From assembly GCF_001194135.2 (NCBI RefSeq), contig NC_068982.1:115242648-115281524 (forward strand): DNA of 38,877 bases. The letters run 5' to 3'. Shown one piece after another: positions 1 through 33,190 of the stretch; the first letter of the stretch is position 1, and each line of letters starts with the position of its first letter. The notes beneath the pieces were generated by a model. The model was not told the DNA's origin. It did not search any database and saw only the letters and a list, made by a program, of their open reading frames with translations. This DNA comes from Octopus bimaculoides (lineage: Eukaryota). The position numbers were made by a program, and so were the translations under genes.

Positions 1-626
1 GGGAAGCAAGCTTCTTTATTTCAATATTTTTGCCATAAAGGCATTACATAGAGGGGACACCTACAACACATGTGGGGACATATAACAATTAAAAATATAT
101 AAAACAAAATATGATATTATGAATGTCATGAAAATGAACATCAAAAACAAATTAAAATTATGATAAGATGTGTGATAGTTGAAAATGAAAATATGAAGAG
201 TGTGCTACTCACCCCACACTGAGCAACACCACTTGCTACCTCTGAGTCCTAATTTCCTTTTAGTCTCTGTTCAGTTCCGCTATCGCTCCTTGACTGCACT
301 CTCTCGTAACCTTTTTCACAGGGGGAGGGGTTTTCTAAATTTTGAGGTGTCTGCTCTGTTTTTTCCCTTTTTTTCCTGTGGGGAAATGAGGTGGGTGGGT
401 TTGGTGTCTGTATGGAGAGGGTGGTCTCGGGTGGGATGGAGTTGGACTGGGGGTACCACATCATACTCAGTGTTCTTTCTTTTTTTCTCTTCTCCCTTCT
501 ACTCTCTGTTACTCTCCATTCTTCCTCCTTCCCTCTGTCTGTCTTTTCTTCCTCTCTTTTCTCTTCTGTCTCCACAACTGTTTCCTCTGCTATTGTCCTC
601 TGTGTGTGTGTGTATATTATTCCTCA

Positions 627-915
627 TCATCATCATTTAATGTCCGTTGTCCAGATTAGTATGGGTTGGACCAAGGCTGGCAAGCTAGAAGGCTGCACCA
701 GGCTCCAGTCTGATTTGGATGCCCTTCCTAACACCAGCTACACTGAGAGTGTAATGGGTGGTTTTACGTGCCACTGGCATGGGTGTCATTTGCATGACAC
801 CAGTATCTGCCATGACTCTGATTTATTTGGCTTGATGGGTCTTCTCAAGCATGGTATAATGCCAAAGGTTTCGGTCATTCATCATTGCCTCCGTGAGGCC
901 CAATGTAATGCTTAG
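627..915 (-). mobile_element. RTE-type LINE 3' end (ORF C-terminus, 3' UTR and (GAT)n tail), 5'-truncated
   Basis: The minus strand encodes LGLTEAMMNDRNLWHYTMLEKTHQAK*, an RTE-like C-terminus. It runs directly into the repeat ...ttaggaagggcatcc...tccaacccat...ttaaatgatgatgatg that recurs about ten times in this window. Confidence 0.75.
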
Positions 916-1234
916 ACATGAACAATTGATACTAAAACACCAGTTTCCTTTTATTGTTTTACTGGAATCAGCCATTGGACACTGACCATGCTCGGGTACT
1001 ATCTTCAAGAGTTTTAGTTGATATTTACTCCATTGCTCATTTCAGTCGTGTTTATTTTAACAATCTCTTGATATAATTAGGCTACATTATTATTTTTATG
1101 TAAAATAACTAATATTTTTTTTATTTATTGGTGATATTAACTTGCTATTTATCACATAATTTGTACTTAAAGTTCCATTAACAATATAATAATTTTGAGT
1201 TTGATTTAAATATGAACACTAGTAAAGTGGTCTT

Positions 1235-1735
1235 AAAAGCATTTGTACAATGGCTTACTTTTGGCCAAATACTTTTCCTGCAGCTGTCTTACTAGGAAAA
1301 TGGCATCTGTGGTACTCTTCCCAGGTACAAAACCACACTGCATCTCATCTAGTTTATTTCTAATCAATTGAGCTATAACTATCTCTGTAACTTTCATGAC
1401 CTGGACCAACAGCTTGAAATCTCTGTAGTTGTTTCTATCTAATGTATCACCTTTACCCTTGTAGAAGCTAACTATAATACTGCTACACCAGTCACTGGGG
1501 ATAACACCTTCCTGAATAACCTAATTAACCAGTGACTAGGCTGTATCCCACACTGCTGGATATTTTAATCATCTCAGCAGTGATATTTGATTGCCCAGGA
1601 GCTTTCCTTGTCTTCAAATCCTTAATTGTCTTATCTATTATACTGCTATCAACTCTGATGGCTGGTCCCTCAATTGGTTCGATATTTAGTAGACTCTCCT
1701 TCTCCCATTCGTTTTCCACATTTAGTAACCTTTCA
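1235..1735 (-). mobile_element. RTE-type LINE reverse transcriptase N-terminal fragment (decayed)
   Basis: Minus-strand translation with a frameshift: ...KTRKAPGQSNITAEMIK... / IIQEGVIPSDWCSSIIVSFYKGKGDTLDRNNYRDFKLL... / DEMQCGFVPGKSTTDAIFLVRQLQEKY. These are canonical non-LTR RT domain 0-2 motifs. Confidence 0.9.
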
Positions 1736-2075
1736 TAGTGGCACTTCCATGCATCTTTCTTCTCTTTATATATATGTGGGTGTCACTACTGGTGATATCA
1801 TCAAATTTAGAATTTATCCACAGATGATATGAACAGTAATGACATCTAACTTCAAATCTCAGTGTTTGAATGTATATATATGTAGTGAAACTACCTCCCG
1901 CCATTAGATACAAACTACTATCGCCATTACATACAATCTTCTCATTTAAATATAAATAAATGCGAGCGTAGTAGAGAACCTATTCCTTGTCCATCACGTG
2001 ACTGATCATTATTCGAATCGGCAACTTCTTCGAACCGTTCCCGCCAGAACGCAAACTGACCAATCACGGCCCCTA

Positions 2076-2571
2076 NNNNNNNNNNNNNNNNNNNNNNNNN
2101 NNNNNNNNNNNNNNNNNNNNNNNNNNNNNNNNNNNNNNNNNNNNNNNNNNNNNNNNNNNNNNNNNNNNNNNNNNNNNNNNNNNNNNNNNNNNNNNNNNNN
2201 NNNNNNNNNNNNNNNNNNNNNNNNNNNNNNNNNNNNNNNNNNNNNNNNNNNNNNNNNNNNNNNNNNNNNNNNNNNNNNNNNNNNNNNNNNNNNNNNNNNN
2301 NNNNNNNNNNNNNNNNNNNNNNNNNNNNNNNNNNNNNNNNNNNNNNNNNNNNNNNNNNNNNNNNNNNNNNNNNNNNNNNNNNNNNNNNNNNNNNNNNNNN
2401 NNNNNNNNNNNNNNNNNNNNNNNNNNNNNNNNNNNNNNNNNNNNNNNNNNNNNNNNNNNNNNNNNNNNNNNNNNNNNNNNNNNNNNNNNNNNNNNNNNNN
2501 NNNNNNNNNNNNNNNNNNNNNNNNNNNNNNNNNNNNNNNNNNNNNNNNNNNNNNNNNNNNNNNNNNNNNNN
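2076..2571. other. Assembly gap (N run)
   Basis: N bases. Confidence 1.
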
Positions 2572-2818
2572 CACATTCACACTCTCACACAGACATACAT
2601 CTTTAACGCTACAATAAATATCTCTGTTATTCACCTAATACGGTTGTGGTCTTTCATTACTGGTCATCTATGTTATCGTCGCATAACATATCATATACAT
2701 CATCTTTGATATATATATTTGTATGTTCGACCGTGTGACACGTTTAAATAAAAGGAGTCCTGTTTTTCCATTCGTCACCATTTCTCCTTTTTGAGTTCGC
2801 ACAGTCGTCCCTTACAAT

Positions 2819-2833
2819 TGGTGACCCCGACGT
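2819..2833 (+). promoter_or_regulatory. Primer-binding site complementary to the tRNA-Trp 3' end (copy 1)
   Basis: TGGTGACCCCGACGT is the reverse complement of the conserved eukaryotic tRNA-Trp 3' end (...ACGUCGGGGUCACCA). It lies 2 nt after ...TTACA. Confidence 0.85.
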
Positions 2834-2850
2834 CGGTCGTCTCTTACAAT

Positions 2851-2865
2851 TGGTGACCCCGACGT
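2851..2865 (+). promoter_or_regulatory. Primer-binding site complementary to the tRNA-Trp 3' end (copy 2)
   Basis: Identical 15-mer exactly 32 bp downstream of copy 1, again 2 nt after TTACA. Confidence 0.85.
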
Positions 2866-3417
2866 TGGTCGTCCCTTACATATATATATGGATGAAAAGT
2901 GGTTAGGAGTCCATACAAATCAAAAATTATAGTTAAAAAAGTAAATAAAGTTGGAAAAGGCACAGAAGTATATTTTAGAGAATGTTTAATAAAATATAAC
3001 CAGTTTCAATGTATCCATCTTTTCAAATATTAGAAATATTAGAAAGAATTTTGTGGGGAGTCAGAGAGAAAAAACATTTTTAGGGGATTTAACAATTTAA
3101 ACCCTGAACAAGTTATCGAACTCCCAGTTGTTATTTATGGTATAAGTCTCTAATTTGTCTACCCTGCACTTATATGCATCAATTAGGGCTTCTCTAGACT
3201 TATGCCTAACTGCAGGTTTTTCTTAGTTTCCATGTTTTTCTTTTCTATATCATCTTTTATCACTGAGTCTATGGACTTCTTTTAACTTCTGTCTACCAAA
3301 TCTACTCACAAAGCTTTGGTTAATTTGGGGCCATAGTAGAAGACACTTCTCTAACATGCCACATAATGTGACTGAACTAGAAACCACATAGCAGAAAGGC
3401 AAACTTCTTAATGACAA

Positions 3418-3605
3418 TATATGCTTTATTATTATTAAAGATGCAAAAATATCACAAAATATCACACTCAGAGTTTTACGTTCCTGTTTGTCGGACAGTT
3501 TACATTCTCAATCTAAACTCCGATGAGCGGGAATGTGAAACTCTGAGTAGCAGTTTTTTGTGATATTTTTTTGATGTTTTTGCAGCTTTAATAATAAAGC
3601 ATATT
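3418..3605. repeat. Long palindromic (fold-back / MITE-like) element
   Basis: Outer arms atatgctttattattattaaagatgcaaaaa... and ...tttttgcagctttaataataaagcatat. The core arms 3466-3502 and 3514-3548 pair around an 11-nt loop. Confidence 0.8.
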
Positions 3606-3674
3606 ATTCTACCCCCAGTATTCAAATATTGTATTTTCCCACCTTGTTTCACATTTCTATGTGCTTACTTTGGT

Positions 3675-4369
3675 NNNNNNNNNNNNNNNNNNNNNNNNNN
3701 NNNNNNNNNNNNNNNNNNNNNNNNNNNNNNNNNNNNNNNNNNNNNNNNNNNNNNNNNNNNNNNNNNNNNNNNNNNNNNNNNNNNNNNNNNNNNNNNNNNN
3801 NNNNNNNNNNNNNNNNNNNNNNNNNNNNNNNNNNNNNNNNNNNNNNNNNNNNNNNNNNNNNNNNNNNNNNNNNNNNNNNNNNNNNNNNNNNNNNNNNNNN
3901 NNNNNNNNNNNNNNNNNNNNNNNNNNNNNNNNNNNNNNNNNNNNNNNNNNNNNNNNNNNNNNNNNNNNNNNNNNNNNNNNNNNNNNNNNNNNNNNNNNNN
4001 NNNNNNNNNNNNNNNNNNNNNNNNNNNNNNNNNNNNNNNNNNNNNNNNNNNNNNNNNNNNNNNNNNNNNNNNNNNNNNNNNNNNNNNNNNNNNNNNNNNN
4101 NNNNNNNNNNNNNNNNNNNNNNNNNNNNNNNNNNNNNNNNNNNNNNNNNNNNNNNNNNNNNNNNNNNNNNNNNNNNNNNNNNNNNNNNNNNNNNNNNNNN
4201 NNNNNNNNNNNNNNNNNNNNNNNNNNNNNNNNNNNNNNNNNNNNNNNNNNNNNNNNNNNNNNNNNNNNNNNNNNNNNNNNNNNNNNNNNNNNNNNNNNNN
4301 NNNNNNNNNNNNNNNNNNNNNNNNNNNNNNNNNNNNNNNNNNNNNNNNNNNNNNNNNNNNNNNNNNNNN
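3675..4369. other. Assembly gap (N run)
   Basis: N bases. Confidence 1.
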
Positions 4370-6469: not shown

Positions 6470-6682
6470 TGGTTGCATAAAAATAAAAGGCACCCAGTAT
6501 ACACTGTAATGTGGTTGGGTATTAGGAAGGGCATCCAACCACAGAAACAATGCTAAAGCAGACAATGGAGCACAATGTAGTCCTTGGACTCATTGGATCC
6601 TTGTCAAACTCTCCAACCCATGCTAGCATGGAATGTGGAAGTTAAATGATGATGAAGATGACAACGATGATGATAATGATGG
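6470..6682 (+). mobile_element. RTE 3' UTR copy with (GAT)n-like tail
   Basis: Contains taaaaggcaccc...ggaagggcatcc...ccaacccatgctagcatgg...ttaaatgatgatg. Confidence 0.7.
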
Positions 6683-7489: not shown

Positions 7490-7850
7490 ATGGCTGTGTG
7501 GTTAAGAAGCTTGCTTTGCAACTACTTGGTTTTGGGTTCAGCCCCACTGTAAGACACTCTGGGCAAAGATCTTCTGATATAACCCTAATCCAACCAATGA
7601 CTTTGCGAACTGGTTGACAGAAACAGTGTGGAAGTCTGTTATGGCTGTGTGGAAGTCTGTCACGGCTGTGTGGAAGTCTGTCATGGCTGTGTGGTAAGAA
7701 GCTTGCTTCCCAACCACATGATTCCAGCTTCAGTCCCACTGTGTGGCACTTTGGGCAAGTATCTTGTACTATAACCTTGGGCTGACCAAAGCCTTGTGAG
7801 TGGATTTGGTAGACAGAAACTGAAAGAAGCCCATTGTGTGTGCGTGCGCG
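7490..7850 (+). mobile_element. Head-to-tail dimer of a tRNA-derived SINE joined by three 21-bp repeats
   Basis: Two copies of ggctgtgtggt(t)aagaagcttgctt...gggcaag...ccaa...tgg(t)..acagaaac, separated by (gtgtggaagtctgtcatggct)x3 at 7626-7688. Confidence 0.7.
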
Positions 7851-8543: not shown

Positions 8544-9069
8544 NNNNNNNNNNNNNNNNNNNNNNNNNNNNNNNNNNNNNNNNNNNNNNNNNNNNNNNNN
8601 NNNNNNNNNNNNNNNNNNNNNNNNNNNNNNNNNNNNNNNNNNNNNNNNNNNNNNNNNNNNNNNNNNNNNNNNNNNNNNNNNNNNNNNNNNNNNNNNNNNN
8701 NNNNNNNNNNNNNNNNNNNNNNNNNNNNNNNNNNNNNNNNNNNNNNNNNNNNNNNNNNNNNNNNNNNNNNNNNNNNNNNNNNNNNNNNNNNNNNNNNNNN
8801 NNNNNNNNNNNNNNNNNNNNNNNNNNNNNNNNNNNNNNNNNNNNNNNNNNNNNNNNNNNNNNNNNNNNNNNNNNNNNNNNNNNNNNNNNNNNNNNNNNNN
8901 NNNNNNNNNNNNNNNNNNNNNNNNNNNNNNNNNNNNNNNNNNNNNNNNNNNNNNNNNNNNNNNNNNNNNNNNNNNNNNNNNNNNNNNNNNNNNNNNNNNN
9001 NNNNNNNNNNNNNNNNNNNNNNNNNNNNNNNNNNNNNNNNNNNNNNNNNNNNNNNNNNNNNNNNNNNNN
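8544..9069. other. Assembly gap (N run) flanked by (TA)n
   Basis: N bases with TA microsatellite on both sides. Confidence 1.
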
Positions 9070-9094
9070 TATATATATATATATATATATATAT

Positions 9095-9650
9095 TTGTGG
9101 AAACTAGGGATAGATGAGTGGTTGGCAAGAGCTGTACAAGCCATGTATGCTGTCAGTAAGGTGAGTGCTGGCAACGAGTATAGCAAAGAATTCAGAGTAC
9201 AAGTAGGGATTCACCAATGGTCAATCCTCAGCTCCTCTTCTTCATCATAATCCAGGCAATAACAGAAGAATTTAAGACTGGCTGCCCTTGGGAGCTCCTC
9301 TATGCTGATGACCTTGTTTTTGTAGCTGAATCACTACTAGAACTAGAGAAGTTCCAGGTGTGGAAGCAAGGTCTAGAATTGAAGGGTGTTAGAGTTAACC
9401 AAGCAAAAACCAAAGTCTTAGTAAGTAGGAAGGCAAACAAATCACAAATCCCTTCAAGTAGTTGTCCCTACTTGATCTGTAGAACAGGTATAGGTAAAAA
9501 CTCCATAAGATGTACCTGGTGAAAGCTATAGACACATAAGAGGTGCAACAATATCAGAGGAAGATTAACAGGGAAAATAGTTTTTGTGTGTGAAAGGTGC
9601 ACAGGTACAATTAATAAATGGACTAAAAATGTACAGAAAATAGATTCCAT
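9095..9650 (+). mobile_element. RTE-type LINE RT core fragment with downstream Cys-rich segment
   Basis: LWKLGIDEWLARAVQAMY...EFRVQVGIHQWSILS / IIIQAITEEFKTGCPWELLYADDLVFVAES...VNQAKTKVL, then CPYLIC...NSIRCTW*KL*THKRC...FVCERC. YADD motif present; frameshift and stops. Confidence 0.9.
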
Positions 9651-13896: not shown

Positions 13897-14179
13897 TGAA
13901 TCAAATCTTGAGCACAGAAGGAATAGCTGTGAAAACAGCTGTAGAAAATCAGGTAAAATACCCCAATAGATGGAAAAAAGGTAACCAGCAGCCTCTACAG
14001 ATAATTAAACTTTTTCCATCTATAAGGGTATTTTACTCAATTTTCTAAAGCTGTTTTCACACCTATTCTCCTGGATTTGAGATTTTCTTCATTTCAAAAA
14101 GTATTTCAACTCACTTGACACTTCAATGTTTACTTATGAATATATATATATATATAATCACATGAACACAACAGTTTAC

Positions 14180-14712
14180 CTCTTCCCTCTTATTCCTTTC
14201 CATTTCTTCCTGAAGTTTCCACTGTTTCTTAACTGCCATTTCTTTCTCTTTGGTTTGATTCAGCCAACATTCAAAAGCCATCTTATTTATTATCTTCTTT
14301 TCCTTTTCCTTTGCCTTCTCTTCTATCATAGCCTTTCTCATTTTTTCTTTGGTTATACGTAACTGCTTCTGAACAGCTTCCTTTTGCTCAGCAGTTAAAG
14401 CATATGGGGAATTGTAGGAACTACAAGTTGAAAATGGACGGTTATCAAGGTTATTCCGCTGGAGTTGAATGTTCAAGTTAGCTGTTAGAGGGCGGTGACT
14501 TTTTGGTTCTAGTTGTTGTCTTTGGTCTTTAGTAGATTTCTGTTTTCTTGGACCATTGGCTGGCAGTTTTTTCATTCTATTTACCAATGCGTTCATATCA
14601 TCTGGAGTAACCAGATCAAAATGGCCATCTCGTTCAATGACCATATCATAGTCATTTTCCAACCTTTCCTCTTGTTTGTCCTTGGAATCCCCTTTTGTAG
14701 GTTTCTTAAGAT
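14180..14712 (-). CDS. CCDC181: CCDC181-like coding exon (largest, carries the diagnostic motif)
   Basis: Acceptor ttttgtcttattatttag|AT and donor GAG|gtaaac; 533 nt, phase 1 to 0. Contains MVIERDGHFDLV (cf. remembered vertebrate LVERDGKFELL), SPYALTAEQKE (cf. YCLSPRQKE) and AFECWL (cf. VFKAWL). Confidence 0.92.
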
Positions 14713-14769
14713 CTAAATAATAAGACAAAAAACTATAATACATTTTTAATATAGACATATTAGGTATGA

Positions 14770-14930
14770 TTGAGATAGCTTGCTTTCCAACTGTGTAATC
14801 TTAGGTTTAATCCCATTGTGTGACATCTTAGGCAAGTTTCTTCTAATAAAGTCCCAGGCCAACCAAAGCATTGTGAGTGAATTTGGTAGGATAGAAACAG
14901 GAAGAAGCCTATTGTATATATGCATGTATG
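14770..14930 (+). mobile_element. tRNA-derived SINE (first family), decayed
   Basis: gcttgctttccaac...ggcaagtttcttct...ggccaaccaaagcattgtgagtgaatttggtagg...gaagaagcc; same family as 7490-7850. Confidence 0.6.
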
Positions 14931-25489: not shown

Positions 25490-25925
25490 TTTTTTACCAT
25501 GGTACGTTGTCTCCTTCATTGAACATGAAACTTGGCTTGCGAAGACCTGTTGGGGCAAGCGAAATCGAAATTGTGATGGCACCTATGCCCAACGTCGCCT
25601 TCCTGGCACGTGTAAAGACATTCGAGCGAGATCGTTGCCAGTGCCGCTGGACTGGCTCCTGTGCAGGTGGCACATAAAATACACCATTTTGAGCGTGGCT
25701 GTTGCCAGTACTGCCTGACTGGCCTTCGTGCCGGTGGCACATAAAAGCACCCACTACACTCTCGGAGTGGTTGGCGTTAGGAAGGGCATCCAACTGTAGA
25801 AACTCTGCCAAATCAGATTGCAGCCTGGTGCAGCCATCTGGTTCACCAATCCTCAGTCAAATCGTCCAACCCATGCTAGCATGGAAAGCGGACGTTAAAC
25901 GATGATGATGATGATGATGATGATG
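25490..25925 (+). mobile_element. Young 5'-truncated RTE copy (ORF end, full 3' UTR, (GAT)n tail)
   Basis: CpG-rich and close to other copies. WLAKTCWGKR resembles the RTE LEKT..AK terminus. Possible short TSD gtacta at 25480 and 25926. Confidence 0.8.
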
Positions 25926-26129
25926 GTACTAACACTAGCGAGGTTGCCAACTAACTCAGAAGGAAAAAAACGCCCCCAAACTGAGTGGAGGTGTAGTAGA
26001 GAGGGAAGTAGCTTTATGGCAGATGTTGAAAGGCTAAAGTATGATAGAAGGACAAGGTATTTTGTTGCAAGGAAGATACATGGCTATCTGACATCATAGA
26101 GGAAGGGAGATAAATGGTAGTGATGAGGT

Positions 26130-27840
26130 GTCAGAGCATACCATCAAAGTACAAGAAGATACAGCTTTGTACATGGCTTGTACAGCCCTCACAGAGCATC
26201 CACTTATGTCCAGTTCTCTAAGTGATCATTAGATTACTGAACATAGTACCCTATCAAATGCTTTCTCCAAGTCAACAAATGTCAGGAATAGTGGTTTACT
26301 CTTAGACAAATATTTCTCCTGCAGCTGAATCAAACTGCATCTCATCTACATTTACCCTATCACAAATCTATTGTGCTCTAAGTCTTTCTGTGACCTTCAT
26401 AAACTGATTCCAGAAGTTTGAGTCCTCAATAATTTCTTCGCTGGCGTTTCCTTTGCCTTTGTAATAGTTTATGATGATACTGCTATGCCAGCTATTGGGC
26501 ATGACTGTTTGTGTAATTTGATGGTGATCATGTATCCTACCTCATCAGATATTTTGAGCATCTCTACAACTATCCTTCACGTGTCTTTGATTGCTTTATC
26601 TTCCATACTGTTATCAACTTGAATTGCTGGTCCCTCTGTAGGGTTAACATGAAGTGGCCCCTTGTTATCCCATGTATTTGCTACATTTAGTAGCTTCTCA
26701 GTATGTCTTCATCATTCTGAATTCACTTCTTGCCAATGACATCTTGGTTCTCTCTCACTGTCTCATAATCCAGAACATCTCATGCCTCTCATCCTCATGT
26801 TGCAAGACATATGCAAATCTCTTCATTTCTGCCTCGCCCTTAGATAAGTATACCTGTTGTCTAGCTCCCTACTTAGCTATTTAGTAATGATTCTAACTAC
26901 CACCATCCTTCCATGTTTTCTTAGCCTCTCATAACCTTTACCACCCTATCAACAGTATCATTCTACCACCATGTTACTTTTGGCTTGGTAGAGACTTTAC
27001 TCCTACCACATGTCTGATCTGTAGCCCCAAGTTGATTATCTCAATGAAACTCCCAGTTTTCACTTTAATCTTTCTCATATGAGTCAATCAGGATTTTTAT
27101 AAATCTGTTTCCAAATTTTTTTTAGTTTCATTTTTCATGTCATCTTTCATTTCTGTATCTGTCTAGCTCTGACTCTGAAGTCATTAGCCACTGGTCTAAG
27201 TTGCATAGTGCTTTTTTTTACCAGGAAAGATTTTTATAGTTTACAATAGCTTTTGTGTTCCATTTCCTAGTGAGAATGTGATCTATCTAACTTCTGTATT
27301 TTCCAGATTGATAGGTGATGAGAAGGTTGGCTGGTTTCCTGAAGTGTGCGTTGCAAATTGTTAGATCAGTTGCATTACAGAACTCCAGAAGTCTTACACC
27401 CTACTCATTTCTTGAACCATATCCATAGTTTTCATCTATGGTCATGAAAACCATCAACATGTAGGCCAACATGTCCATTGAAGTCATCAGTCATAATGAT
27501 GAAGTCACTGTTGATTGTCACTGAAGTAGTTTGCAGTAAGTCTCATGTTCTTTTGTCAGACCTGCTTGAGGGACATTCTTATCTTAATTATCCTATTGCA
27601 TACCCTGACTACCTCAATTACTTTTTCTATCCATTTCTTAGCTAATAATATACCTACTCCACTCCTGCTGTTACTATTACTCACTCAGAAGAATCTGTAT
27701 TGCTGTCTCTTGCTTGGTTGAAGATCACACAACACACATCCATTTGTCTCTACTCCAGCATTTTCACAATCTCAACAGACCTATCTTCCATTATGCCTAC
27801 ATTTATGGTTGCAGCCCTAAAGTTTTGGAACCTACATTGA
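26130..27840 (-). mobile_element. RTE-type LINE 5' portion: APE endonuclease, linker and RT start (decayed), sense to host gene
   Basis: Minus strand: FRAATINVG...EIVKML; DFNGHVG; GYGSRNE*GVRLLEFCNATDLTICNAHFRKP; later QLQEKYLSKSKPLFLTFVDLEKAFDRV. Confidence 0.9.
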
Positions 27841-30706: not shown

Positions 30707-31544
30707 GTATTTATTTTGAGATGCTCTGTGTTTCTTTCAATTCATTTTAAATATAACAAAGAATTTAGTAAAATAACTTAGTTATCATTAAGCTAGTGTT
30801 AGGAACATAAATTGTGACTAAGATTTGGTGGAATATTTAATTCAAAACTTATGAAAACAAGACATTTGTACTACAGAGCCAGAGGCTGTTTCAGGCAGGT
30901 TGGTATCATCGTCGTCGTCGTTTAACGTCCACTTTCCATGCTAGCATGGGTTGGACGATTTGACTGAGGACTGGTGAAACCAGATGGCTACACCAGGCTC
31001 CAATCTGATTTGGCAGTGTTTCNNNNNNNNNNNNNNNNNNNNNNNNNNNNNNNNNNNNNNNNNNNNNNNNNNNNNNNNNNNNNNNNNNNNNNNNNNNNNN
31101 NNNNNNNNNNNNNNNNNNNNNNNNNNNNNNNNNNNNNNNNNNNNNNNNNNNNNNNNNNNNNNNNNNNNNNNNNNNNNNNNNNNNNNNNNNNNNNNNNNNN
31201 NNNNNNNNNGCACGAAGGCCAGTCAGGTGGTACTGGCAACGGCCACGCTCATCTCGCTCGAGAAACCTCATGTGTCACCCGCACAAGAGCCAGTCCAGGG
31301 GCACCAGCAACGATCCCGCTCGAAAATCCCACAACAACCCCACACAAGAGCCAGTTCAGGGGCACCGGCAACGATCTCGCTCGAAGAAATTTCATGTGTC
31401 ACCAGCACAAGAGCCAGCCCAGGGGCACCGGCAACGATCCAGCTCGGAAGATTTCATGTGTCGCCCGCACATGAGCCAATCCAGGGGCACTGGCAACGAT
31501 CCCGCTCGAAAGACTTCATGTGTCGCCCGCACATAAAGGGTTAA
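30707..31544. mobile_element. MITE-like element with piggyBac-type terminus (...AAAGGG-TTAA), split by an RTE insertion near its end
   Basis: The AT-rich body 30707-30906 ends ...ggttggtat and resumes aaagggttaa at 31535-31544. The family identity is recalled from cephalopod repeats; the opposite TIR is not preserved here. Confidence 0.45.
30907..31534 (-). mobile_element. Young 5'-truncated RTE 3' UTR copy with a 62-bp tandem array (contains assembly gap 31023-31209)
   Basis: Tail catcgtcgtcgtcg-tttaacgtcc...; the array has 4 full units plus 1 partial, starting at 31269, ~31330, 31393, 31455 and 31517. CpG-rich. Confidence 0.85.
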
Positions 31545-33029: not shown

Positions 33030-33190
33030 ATACACATACACACATTGATATATATTTGATAAGCTTCTTTCAGTTTCCATCTACCAAATCCACTCACAAG
33101 GCTTGAGGCTGTAGTAGAAGACATTTGCCCAAAGCACTACACAGTTGGACTGAACCAAGAACTATGTGGCTGGGAAGCAAACTTCTTACC
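33030..33190 (-). mobile_element. tRNA-derived SINE (first family)
   Basis: The reverse complement of 7686-7850: cttctttcagtttccatctaccaaatccactcacaaggc...tgggaagcaaacttcttaccacac. Confidence 0.7.

What the first reader, a model, noticed from the sequence alone, without database searches (positions are those of the whole stretch)
1881..2880. Solo LTR terminating in a tandem array of [LTR end + tRNA-Trp PBS] units
Seen: after the LTR end GTCGTCCCTTACA (2804-2816) come AT, a 15-nt tRNA-Trp PBS and 2 nt. The last 13 bp of the LTR, PBS and linker then repeat, giving a 32-bp period (2804-2835, 2836-2867). A third LTR end (2868-2880) abuts TATA, matching the left flank. The two units differ at 2 positions, so simple assembly duplication is less likely. 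The first PBS/LTR-end junction forms the perfect palindrome CCGACGTCGG (2827-2836). Known: a normal solo LTR carries no PBS, and plus-strand strong-stop DNA ends in a PBS copy. Inference: this is either repeated aberrant strand transfer or fold-back at the PBS/U5 complementarity that still left an integrase-competent CA end, or an ultra-minimal non-autonomous element whose whole internal region is PBS repeats. Either would be an unusual LTR architecture.
Basis: partly seen in the sequence, partly recalled or inferred. Interest (0 to 1): 0.7.

Follow-up and report, generated by a model that had tools for sequence, protein, structure and literature searches.

The report
Solo LTR ending in primer-site repeats
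A young retrotransposon terminal repeat, inserted into an old LINE, really does end in two extra copies of its last 13 bases plus a tRNA-Trp primer-binding site, a one-locus curiosity that probably records a reverse-transcription slip, though I could not show that it is more than a one-off.

Summary
Positions 2804-2880 are a 32-bp tandem array of 2.4 copies. Each unit is the 13-nt LTR end, AT, a 15-nt complement of the tRNA-Trp 3' end, and 2 more nt. The last 13-mer abuts TATA, as does the LTR start at 1881.

New evidence:
- The flanks are collinear pieces of one old LINE once 1881-2880 is removed.
- Both sides of the gap share a CpG content (o/e 1.4-1.5) far above the rest of the window (0.20), so they belong to one young insert.
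- The two sides of the gap show no similarity to each other, and there is no polypurine tract. It is therefore not a miniature two-LTR element.
- Letters 16-17 after each PBS do not match tRNA, so the copies came from element nucleic acid, not tRNA read-through.

Best reading (about 0.4): reverse transcriptase switched templates in the U5/PBS region and lengthened U5, and LTR-LTR recombination later left a solo LTR. Close rival (about 0.3): a post-integration internal deletion followed by replication slippage.

No other family copy could be reached with these tools, and the 2076-2571 gap stays open. Whether the array is a family trait is untested. Interest is modest.

The parts
1230..1812 (-). 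Left flank: degenerate LINE copy (end of the endonuclease-RT linker and the start of RT), the older host of the insertion.
   Evidence: Pfam RVT_1 gives a weak hit on 1236-1520(-). There are 188 RT homologues at E<=1e-5. It matches the in-window paralogue 26271-26775 and the L002 LINE ORFs, residues 331-405 and RT residues 1-99.
1877..1880 (.). Left copy of the target-site duplication, TATA, lying within (TA)4 at 1873-1880.
   Evidence: Direct reading. The length is ambiguous, 4 to 8 bp, because both flanks are TA repeats.
1881..2075 (+). LTR, 5' part (presumed U3). It starts with TGT and carries a CCAAT at 2060.
   Evidence: CpG o/e is 1.52 against 0.20 for the rest of the window.
2076..2571 (.). 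Assembly gap of 496 N with estimated length, lying inside the insert.
   Evidence: Its content is unknown. It is presumed to hold the middle of the LTR.
2572..2816 (+). LTR, 3' part (presumed R/U5). AATAAA occurs at 2613 and 2747, and the part ends ACA at 2816. The heptamer GTCACCA (2774-2780) is complementary to the first 7 nt of the PBS.
   Evidence: CpG o/e is 1.36. It shows no similarity to 1881-2075.
2804..2835 (+). Repeat unit 1: 13-nt LTR end (2804-2816), AT (2817-2818), 15-nt tRNA-Trp PBS (2819-2833), CG (2834-2835).
2836..2867 (+). Repeat unit 2: 13-mer with one C>T (2842), AT, an identical PBS (2851-2865), then TG (a CpG>TpG change at 2866).
2868..2880 (+). Third, terminal copy of the 13-nt LTER end: it has no AT after it and is joined directly to the target duplication, so it is the end that was integrated.
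2881..2884 (.). Right copy of the target-site duplication, TATA, at the start of the TA run 2881-2889.
3169..3295 (-). Right flank: remnant of the same LINE (endonuclease region), collinear with the left flank once 1881-2880 is removed.
   Evidence: Local alignment to paralogue 27074-27198 gives 74.6% of 114 positions and score 56, against a shuffle maximum of 51 in 200. tblastn gives E 0.078. In LINE residue numbering the expected spacing is 423 bp and the observed spacing is 410 bp.

Best explanation
The segment 1881-2880 is the remnant of a young, CpG-rich LTR retroelement primed by tRNA-Trp. It integrated into a (TA)n tract inside an old LINE copy and now consists, as far as the gap allows one to see, of a single LTR.

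Its U5 end is lengthened by two extra 32-nt units, each made of [last 13 nt of U5 + AT + 15-nt PBS + 2 leader nt].

Most likely origin (inferred, not shown):
1. During minus-strand strong-stop synthesis, reverse transcriptase copied the AT and the last 13 nt of U5.
2. It then switched to a point 2 nt downstream of the PBS on element RNA and copied PBS-AT-U5 again. This happened once or twice, or once followed by a later slippage.
3. Strong-stop DNA supplies U5 to both LTRs, so the resulting copy had the array in both LTRs.
4. Its outermost 13-mer, ending CA+AT, was a normal integrase substrate.
5. Ordinary LTR-LTR recombination later left the solo LTR.

The array may already have been carried by the parent lineage.
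For: Shown:
- The array and its exact register.
- Each internal 13-mer is followed by AT+PBS, as at a true U5/PBS junction. The terminal 13-mer lacks the AT and abuts the TATA duplication, as a processed integration end does.
- The PBS matches letters 1-15 of the tRNA-Trp complement, but letters 16-17 (CG, TG) do not. The copies were therefore templated by element sequence, not by reading into the tRNA.
- The flanks are collinear parts of one LINE, with 410 bp between the anchors against 423 bp expected, once 1881-2880 is removed.
- The insert has 29 CpG in 504 bp, o/e 1.47, against 0.20 for the rest of the window and a maximum of 0.75 over 137 tiles. The signature is the same on both sides of the gap. 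The insert is therefore one young element that has had little time for several post-insertion rearrangements.

Inferred:
- An event anchored at the tRNA primer explains, without coincidence, why the array starts 13 nt inside U5, contains the PBS, and ends exactly at the element's end.
- Aberrant strand transfers that leave junctions at or next to the PBS are documented among integrated defective HIV-1 proviruses (PMC12657518).
Against: - There is only one locus. No other family copy could be found, so neither the normal leader sequence nor the family's LTR end is known.
- The junction between the PBS+2 and the 13-mer shows no visible microhomology of the kind that usually guides template switches. 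GTCG is present twice rather than once.
- The two differences between units need either time or inheritance through a lineage.
- A deletion plus slippage at the DNA level gives the same letters.
- The gap hides about half of the insert.
Confidence: 0.4

Rival explanations
1. Post-integration decay. A normal full-length copy suffered an illegitimate-recombination or end-joining deletion. The deletion ran from 2 nt after the PBS to 13 bp before the end of the 3' LTR, leaving 5' LTR-AT-PBS-CG-13-mer. The 32-bp segment, now flanked by 13-bp direct repeats, was then duplicated once by replication slippage or unequal exchange. Two substitutions followed.
For: - It produces exactly the observed letters and keeps both ends and the TSD.
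- Internal deletions and short tandem duplications are the commonest fate of old LTR elements (established knowledge: Devos, Brown and Bennetzen 2002, on illegitimate recombination in LTR retrotransposons).
- The window is rich in micro- and minisatellites.
- One of the two unit differences is a CpG>TpG change, as expected after insertion in this CpG-depleted genome.
Against: - Both deletion endpoints must fall by chance within a few bases of two landmarks, the PBS end and the LTR end.
- A second rare event is then needed.
- The insert still has CpG o/e 1.47 in a genome at 0.20, so it is young and has had limited time for these changes.
Confidence: 0.3
2. Family trait. This is an ordinary solo LTR of a lineage whose U5 already contained PBS copies, inherited through many replication cycles. 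This is a sub-case of the best explanation in which the slip is ancient.
For: The two units differ at 2 of 32 positions although the insert looks young by CpG content. This is easier to explain if the units diverged while replicating.
Against: No second copy was found to show it. Two substitutions in 77 bp is too small a number to date anything.
Confidence: 0.15
3. Assembly or scaffolding artefact. Either the array, or the juxtaposition of 1881-2075 with 2572-2880, was created by the assembler in a repeat-rich draft. Alternatively, the gap hides a whole internal region, so that the element is not solo.
For: - The window is a gappy draft with four N runs.
- The contig carrying the array (2572-3674) is only 1.1 kb and is bounded by gaps on both sides.
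- The gap length is only an estimate.
Against: - The units differ at two positions, and the array is 233 bp from the gap edge.
- The junction letters must exist in reads for a graph assembler to output them (inference).
- The outer flanks are collinear in one LINE.
- Both sides of the gap share the same extreme CpG signature.
Confidence: 0.07
4. Ultra-minimal non-autonomous LTR element (TRIM/SMART-like) whose internal region is made only of PBS repeats.
For: A PBS is present and the total size is small. Very small LTR elements exist, such as the 292-bp SMART (PMC3281118, listed).
Against: - There is no second terminal repeat. Only 13 bp recur, and the LTR parts on the two sides of the gap share no similarity (score 20 against a shuffle mean of 17.6; 52 of 300 shuffles do as well).
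- There is no polypurine tract.
- With no R at the 3' end, the first strand transfer could not occur (established retroelement mechanism).
Confidence: 0.03

Closest known systems
Solo LTRs of LTR retrotransposons and endogenous retroviruses
   Same: It has TGT...ACA termini and a short target-site duplication. It interrupts an older repeat and, as far as can be seen, has no internal coding region. It carries promoter- and poly(A)-like signals (CCAAT, AATAAA).
   Different: A normal solo LTR contains no PBS. This one carries two PBS copies and two extra U5 ends inside its boundaries.
Defective proviruses from aberrant strand transfers (HIV-1 reservoir study, PMC12657518)
   Same: An integrated copy whose abnormal junction lies immediately after the PBS. 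The mechanism is RT leaving its template at the primer region.
   Different: In those proviruses the junction carries tRNA letters beyond the PBS and leads to a downstream internal site. Here letters 16-17 are not tRNA letters, the acceptor is the last 13 nt of U5, and the event is repeated in tandem.
Direct-repeat duplication and deletion by RT template switching in retroviral replication (established knowledge, not retrieved here)
   Same: A short segment bounded by the donor and acceptor sites is duplicated head-to-tail with identical junctions.
   Different: No guiding direct repeat can be seen, because the family's normal leader is unknown.
TRIM / SMART miniature LTR retrotransposons (PMC3281118; bioRxiv 10.1101/010850)
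   Same: Small size and a PBS next to a terminal repeat.
   Different: Those elements have two full terminal repeats and a PPT. Here the second 'repeat' is only 13 bp and there is no PPT.
Minisatellite expansion by replication slippage
   Same: A 32-bp period, 2.4 copies, and identical junctions in each unit.
   Different: The register coincides exactly with functional retroelement landmarks: the U5 end, the 2-nt spacer, the PBS and the integration end.

Membership tests
LTR retroelement, solo LTR | TG...CA terminal dinucleotides forming a short inverted terminal repeat | tested here: met
   TGTA at 1881-1884 and TACA at 2877-2880, also TACA at 2813-2816.
LTR retroelement, solo LTR | Target-site duplication of 4-6 bp | tested here: inconclusive
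   TATA is present on both sides, but both flanks are (TA)n. Any even length from 4 to 8 fits, and the match is less informative than usual.
LTR retroelement, solo LTR | PBS complementary to a tRNA 3' end within a few bases of the LTR end | tested here: met
   A 15-nt perfect match to the complement of the tRNA-Trp 3' end lies 2 nt after CA. The host's own tRNA-Trp is not available, and the window has no tRNA gene.
LTR retroelement, solo LTR | It is an insertion: the flanks are continuous when it is removed | tested here: met
   Left and right flanks map to LINE residues from about 331 onward and about 162-190. Spacing is 410 bp observed against 423 bp expected. The right-flank match is weak (E 0.078; DNA score above all 200 shuffles).
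LTR retroelement, solo LTR | No internal region between the LTR ends (truly solo) | tested here: inconclusive
   496 N of estimated length lie inside it. The two visible parts do not overlap in sequence and share a CpG signature.
LTR retroelement, solo LTR | Other copies of the same LTR in the genome | not testable with these tools
   There is none in the window. The source genome is not in any searchable collection.
TRIM / SMART miniature LTR element | Two terminal direct repeats flanking the PBS and PPT | tested here: not met
   Only 13 bp recur. 1881-2075 against 2572-2816 scores no better than shuffles. There is no purine run of 9 or more in 1781-2900.
tRNA gene or tRNA-derived SINE | tRNA cloverleaf or internal promoter region beyond the 3' end | tested here: not met
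   ARAGORN finds 0 genes. Rfam gives no hit at gathering score, and only noise at E<=10 in 1700-3100. Only 15 nt of the tRNA complement are present.
Provirus with deferred plus-strand transfer (tRNA read-through) | tRNA-derived letters continuing beyond the PBS at the junction | tested here: not met
   Letters 16-18 are CGG and TGG, not those of the tRNA-Trp complement printed.
Assembler-made duplication | Identical copies, typically at a gap edge | tested here: not met
   There are two differences between the units, and the array lies 233 bp from the gap. Reads are not available.

The most novel reading that the evidence does not exclude
The PBS-containing array is not a scar. It would be a heritable feature of a tRNA-Trp-primed LTR lineage whose U5 carries extra primer-binding sites. 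These could offer alternative priming registers, so that LTR length varies from cycle to cycle. Alternatively, in LTR-derived transcripts, they could act as decoy targets for 3' tRNA fragments, which are reported to restrain LTR elements through the PBS (review PMC7472051, listed).
Probability: 0.12. Interest if true: 0.6.

Novelty: new variant of a known kind. Interest (0 to 1): 0.3.

Why it matters
If the array was made by reverse transcriptase, this locus is a fixed genomic fossil of an error at the very first steps of reverse transcription. It would show that an LTR edge can be moved outward past a PBS and still be integrated. That would matter for how LTR boundaries are defined by annotation software, which would call a wrong LTR end or a tiny 'element' here. 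It would also matter for how LTR architecture evolves. If the array is only deletion plus slippage, it is ordinary decay and matters only as an annotation trap.

Tried and rejected
Searches for family copies:
- blastn of both LTR pieces against the window found nothing beyond the pieces themselves.
- Exact or degenerate pattern scans covered the LTR end plus PBS, the PBS-to-13-mer junction, the U5 end and the LTR start. They ran against viral contigs, metagenome contigs and genome contigs. All were empty. These collections evidently do not hold the source eukaryote, so the nulls say nothing about copy number.
- A protein-space search with the ORF spanning the LTR gave no hit.
- Exact look-ups of short LTR and junction ORFs found nothing on record.

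Identifying the organism or finding an orthologous locus:
- The 211-aa ORF at 14123-14758 gave no exact record and no homologue.
- LINE RT homologues sit on unnamed ENA contigs. They share only the LINE with the window, at about 70% identity, and carry no tRNA-Trp PBS.

Empty-site test:
- A base-precise alignment of the joined flanks to the in-window LINE paralogue failed. The paralogue is too diverged near the junction, so only coarse collinearity could be shown.

Other checks that led nowhere:
- Coding remnants of gag or pol downstream of the array: none. The only hits are LINE RT fragments.
- Hairpin or fold-back role of the palindrome: DNA z -1.1 and RNA z -2.4, not compelling.
- Literature search for PBS duplications: one search was mostly noise and one failed on term length.

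Full report

Yes. Reading 1600-3200 shows the letters as described.

- Tandem Repeats Finder gives one array at 2804-2880 with period 32, 2.4 copies, 93% matches and score 140. The repeat finder family D15 agrees.
- Unit 1 (2804-2835) is the 13-mer GTCGTCCCTTACA, then AT, then the 15-mer TGGTGACCCCGACGT, then CG.
- Unit 2 (2836-2867) differs at two positions only, both C>T: 2842, and 2866 at a CpG.
- A third, perfect 13-mer (2868-2880) ends the array.
- The 15-mer occurs nowhere else in the window even with 3 mismatches. Shuffles give 0.14 expected, and 0 of 100 reach two matches.
- The 13-mer occurs only at these three places. Shuffles give 0.26 expected, and 0 of 100 reach three.
- CCGACGTCGG (2827-2836) is a perfect palindrome.
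- The left boundary is TATA|TGTAGTG at 1880/1881. The right boundary is CTTACA|TATA at 2880/2881.
- Both flanks are TA runs (1873-1880 and 2881-2889), so the target duplication could be 4, 6 or 8 bp.

**2. Is the 15-mer a tRNA-Trp primer-binding site?**

The window has no tRNA gene and no Rfam match. I therefore searched the literature for the window's own 15 letters.

- They are the first 15 of the 18 letters printed as the complement of the tRNA-Trp 3' end in PMC4635179.
- They are also the first 15 letters of the reverse-complement oligonucleotide of a human tRNA-Trp gene with CCA in PMC6379413.
- The site lies 2 nt after a CA, which is the usual geometry of a U5/PBS junction.
- Letters 16-18 (CGG in unit 1, TGG in unit 2) do not match the tRNA complement. 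Letter 16 would pair with position 61 of the tRNA, which is C in essentially all tRNAs (established knowledge).
- The letters after position 15 are therefore element letters. This matters for mechanism: the PBS copies were templated by element RNA or DNA, not by reading into the tRNA primer.

**3. The gap, tested first**

Positions 2076-2571 are 496 N. No reading frame is involved. Continuity cannot be shown directly, but three indirect tests were possible.

(a) Collinearity of the outer flanks.
- The left flank is a degenerate LINE on the minus strand. Pfam RVT_1 gives a weak hit on 1236-1520, and there are 188 RT homologues.
- It aligns to an in-window paralogue at 26271-26775. It also aligns to residues 331-405 of the 410-aa endonuclease/linker ORF and to RT residues 1-99 of a better-preserved copy, L002.
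- The right flank 3169-3295 aligns to paralogue 27074-27198. Identity is 74.6% of 114 positions and the score is 56, above all 200 shuffles (maximum 51). tblastn gives E 0.078.
- That paralogue stretch corresponds to about residues 162-190 of the same ORF.
- An intact LINE has about 423 bp between those two anchors. Here there are 410 bp once 1881-2880 is taken out. So 1881-2880 behaves as one insertion into one LINE.
- A base-precise empty-site alignment failed because the copies are too diverged near the junction.

(b) Composition.
- The insert has 29 CpG in 504 readable bp, o/e 1.47. The left part is 1.52, the right part 1.36 and the array 1.37.
- The rest of the window is at 0.20. The median 500-bp tile is 0.17 and the maximum over 137 tiles is 0.75.
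- Both sides of the gap therefore carry the same highly unusual signature. They are best read as parts of one young element in a strongly CpG-depleted genome.

(c) No overlap.
- 1881-2075 and 2572-2816 show no similarity to each other. The score is 20 against a shuffle mean of 17.6, and 52 of 300 shuffles do as well.
- They are therefore different parts of one LTR of at least 440 bp, not two short LTRs.

What remains open is whether the gap hides only the middle of the LTR or something more. 'Solo' is conditional on the gap estimate.

**4. What it is**

It is an LTR-retroelement terminus.
- It has TGT...ACA ends, a TSD, CCAAT at 2060, and AATAAA at 2613 and 2747.
- A true U5-AT-PBS junction is present.
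- There is no purine run of 9 or more anywhere in 1781-2900, so no polypurine tract either upstream of 1881 or inside the array.
- No gag or pol remnant lies downstream. The only coding remnants nearby are LINE RT pieces.
- The superfamily (Gypsy, BEL/Pao, Copia or retrovirus-like) cannot be assigned without an internal region.

Each internal 13-mer is followed by AT+PBS, as at a 5' LTR/PBS junction. The last 13-mer is joined directly to the TATA duplication without the AT, as expected of an end that integrase processed and joined.

**5. How it probably arose**

Any explanation must place the last 13 nt of U5 directly after PBS+2 nt, do so with an identical junction twice, and leave a U5 end at the extreme right.

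Preferred explanation (confidence about 0.4, inferred):
1. The tRNA-primed minus strand was extended over AT and 13 nt of U5.
2. RT then switched to a point 2 nt 3' of the PBS on element RNA, for example the co-packaged copy.
3. It copied PBS, AT and U5 again, once or twice, before continuing normally.
4. Minus-strand strong-stop DNA supplies U5 to both LTRs, so both LTRs of the product become U3-R-U5-[AT-PBS-NN-13-mer]n. The right end still terminates in CA+AT, and the 5' LTR is still followed by AT+PBS.
5. Common LTR-LTR recombination then leaves exactly the observed structure.

Points in favour of this reading:
- It explains without coincidence why the array is anchored on the primer site and ends at the element's end.
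- It agrees with the non-tRNA letters 16-17.
- It has a documented counterpart in integrated defective HIV-1 proviruses, whose junctions lie at the PBS after aberrant strand transfer (PMC12657518).

A variant (about 0.15) is that the slip is old and the array is carried by a lineage. The 2-in-32 divergence of the units in an otherwise young-looking insert leans slightly that way.

**6. The main rival (about 0.3)**

A normal copy lost everything from 2 nt after the PBS to 13 bp before the end of its 3' LTR, by illegitimate recombination or end joining. The 32-bp segment, now flanked by 13-bp repeats, was then duplicated by slippage.

- In favour: it gives the same letters and the same TSD, and it uses the commonest decay processes of LTR elements.
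- Against: both breakpoints must coincide with functional landmarks, a second rare event is needed, and the insert is young by CpG content.
- Both models need the same hidden fact, namely what the family's leader looks like just after the PBS. As it stands, the junction keeps GTCG twice and shows no consumed microhomology.

**7. Rejected or unlikely readings**

- Assembly artefact (about 0.07). The units differ at two positions, the array is 233 bp from the gap, the flanks are collinear, and the CpG signature is shared.
- Miniature non-autonomous element (about 0.03). There is no second LTR or R and no PPT.
- Fold-back at the palindrome. The GACGTC core is intrinsic to the tRNA-Trp PBS. The two copies can pair, but the fold is not better than shuffles as DNA (z -1.1) and only mildly better as RNA (z -2.4).
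- tRNA gene or SINE. Excluded.

**8. What could not be done**

It was not possible.

- The window holds no second copy.
- Every scan of the public collections was empty.
- Protein-space routes found nothing.
- The ENA contigs reached through the LINE share only that LINE with the window and carry no such PBS.
- The organism remains unidentified. It is an AT-rich eukaryote (36.6% G+C) with strong CpG depletion, sequenced as a gappy draft.

**9. Verdict**

This is a real, unusual, single-locus variant of a solo LTR. It most likely records an RT template switch at the U5/PBS junction, with post-integration deletion plus slippage a close second. It is a new variant of a known kind, of modest interest unless a census shows it to be a family trait.

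Noticed in passing
window 1-38877, compared with 1881-2880: The window is extremely CpG-depleted (o/e 0.20; median 500-bp tile 0.17). The insert is at 1.47, higher than any of the 137 tiles. The host genome is evidently heavily methylated in the germ line, and the LTR is a recent arrival.
   Followed up: partly
window 25900-27600 (-): A second, degenerate LINE copy (endonuclease plus RT) of the same broad family as the one hosting the LTR, about 70% identical to it in DNA. I used it as the yardstick for collinearity.
   Followed up: partly
window 9184-9519 (+): An RT fragment with a YADD motif (Pfam RVT_1, E 5.8e-4, below the curated cutoff) lies directly after the gap 8544-9069, which itself sits in a (TA)n tract.
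   Followed up: no
window 391-915, 25494-25811, 30974-31544; inverted copy near 6518-6661: A dispersed repeat shares a recognisable translated motif (…LQSDLDALPN…HWH/HRHEGQSG…) and 21-50-nt inverted matches (I2 and I20; ORFs). It is probably a SINE-like family and was not characterised.
   Followed up: no
window 3419-3604: A roughly 185-bp palindromic, foldback-like segment with nested inverted repeats: 3429-3459/3567-3597 (90%) and 3466-3495/3519-3548 (80%). The self-inverted blastn hit is, and the repeats are. It could be a MITE.
   Followed up: no
window 3271-3410, 7695-7834, 14805-14889, 33064-33188: Another dispersed repeat of about 100-140 bp at 67-76% identity, present in both orientations.
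   Followed up: no
window 2774-2780 and 2819-2825: The U5 heptamer GTCACCA is identical to the last 7 letters of the tRNA-Trp 3' end. It is therefore complementary to the start of the PBS, and the predicted RNA fold pairs them. This could be a U5-PBS stem of the kind known in retroviral leaders, or chance.
   Followed up: no
window 14123-14758 (-): A 211-aa Lys/Glu-rich ORF that looks like an exon. It has no homologue at E<=1e-5 among 5.8 billion proteins and no exact record.
   Followed up: partly
window gaps 3675-4369, 8544-9069 and 31023-31209: Gap 8544-9069 is bordered on both sides by simple repeats ((TA)n), and gap 3675-4369 is followed by a (TATG)n run; the borders of 31023-31209 were not examined. 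Such gaps are typical of short-read scaffolds, so gap sizes here deserve little trust.
   Followed up: no
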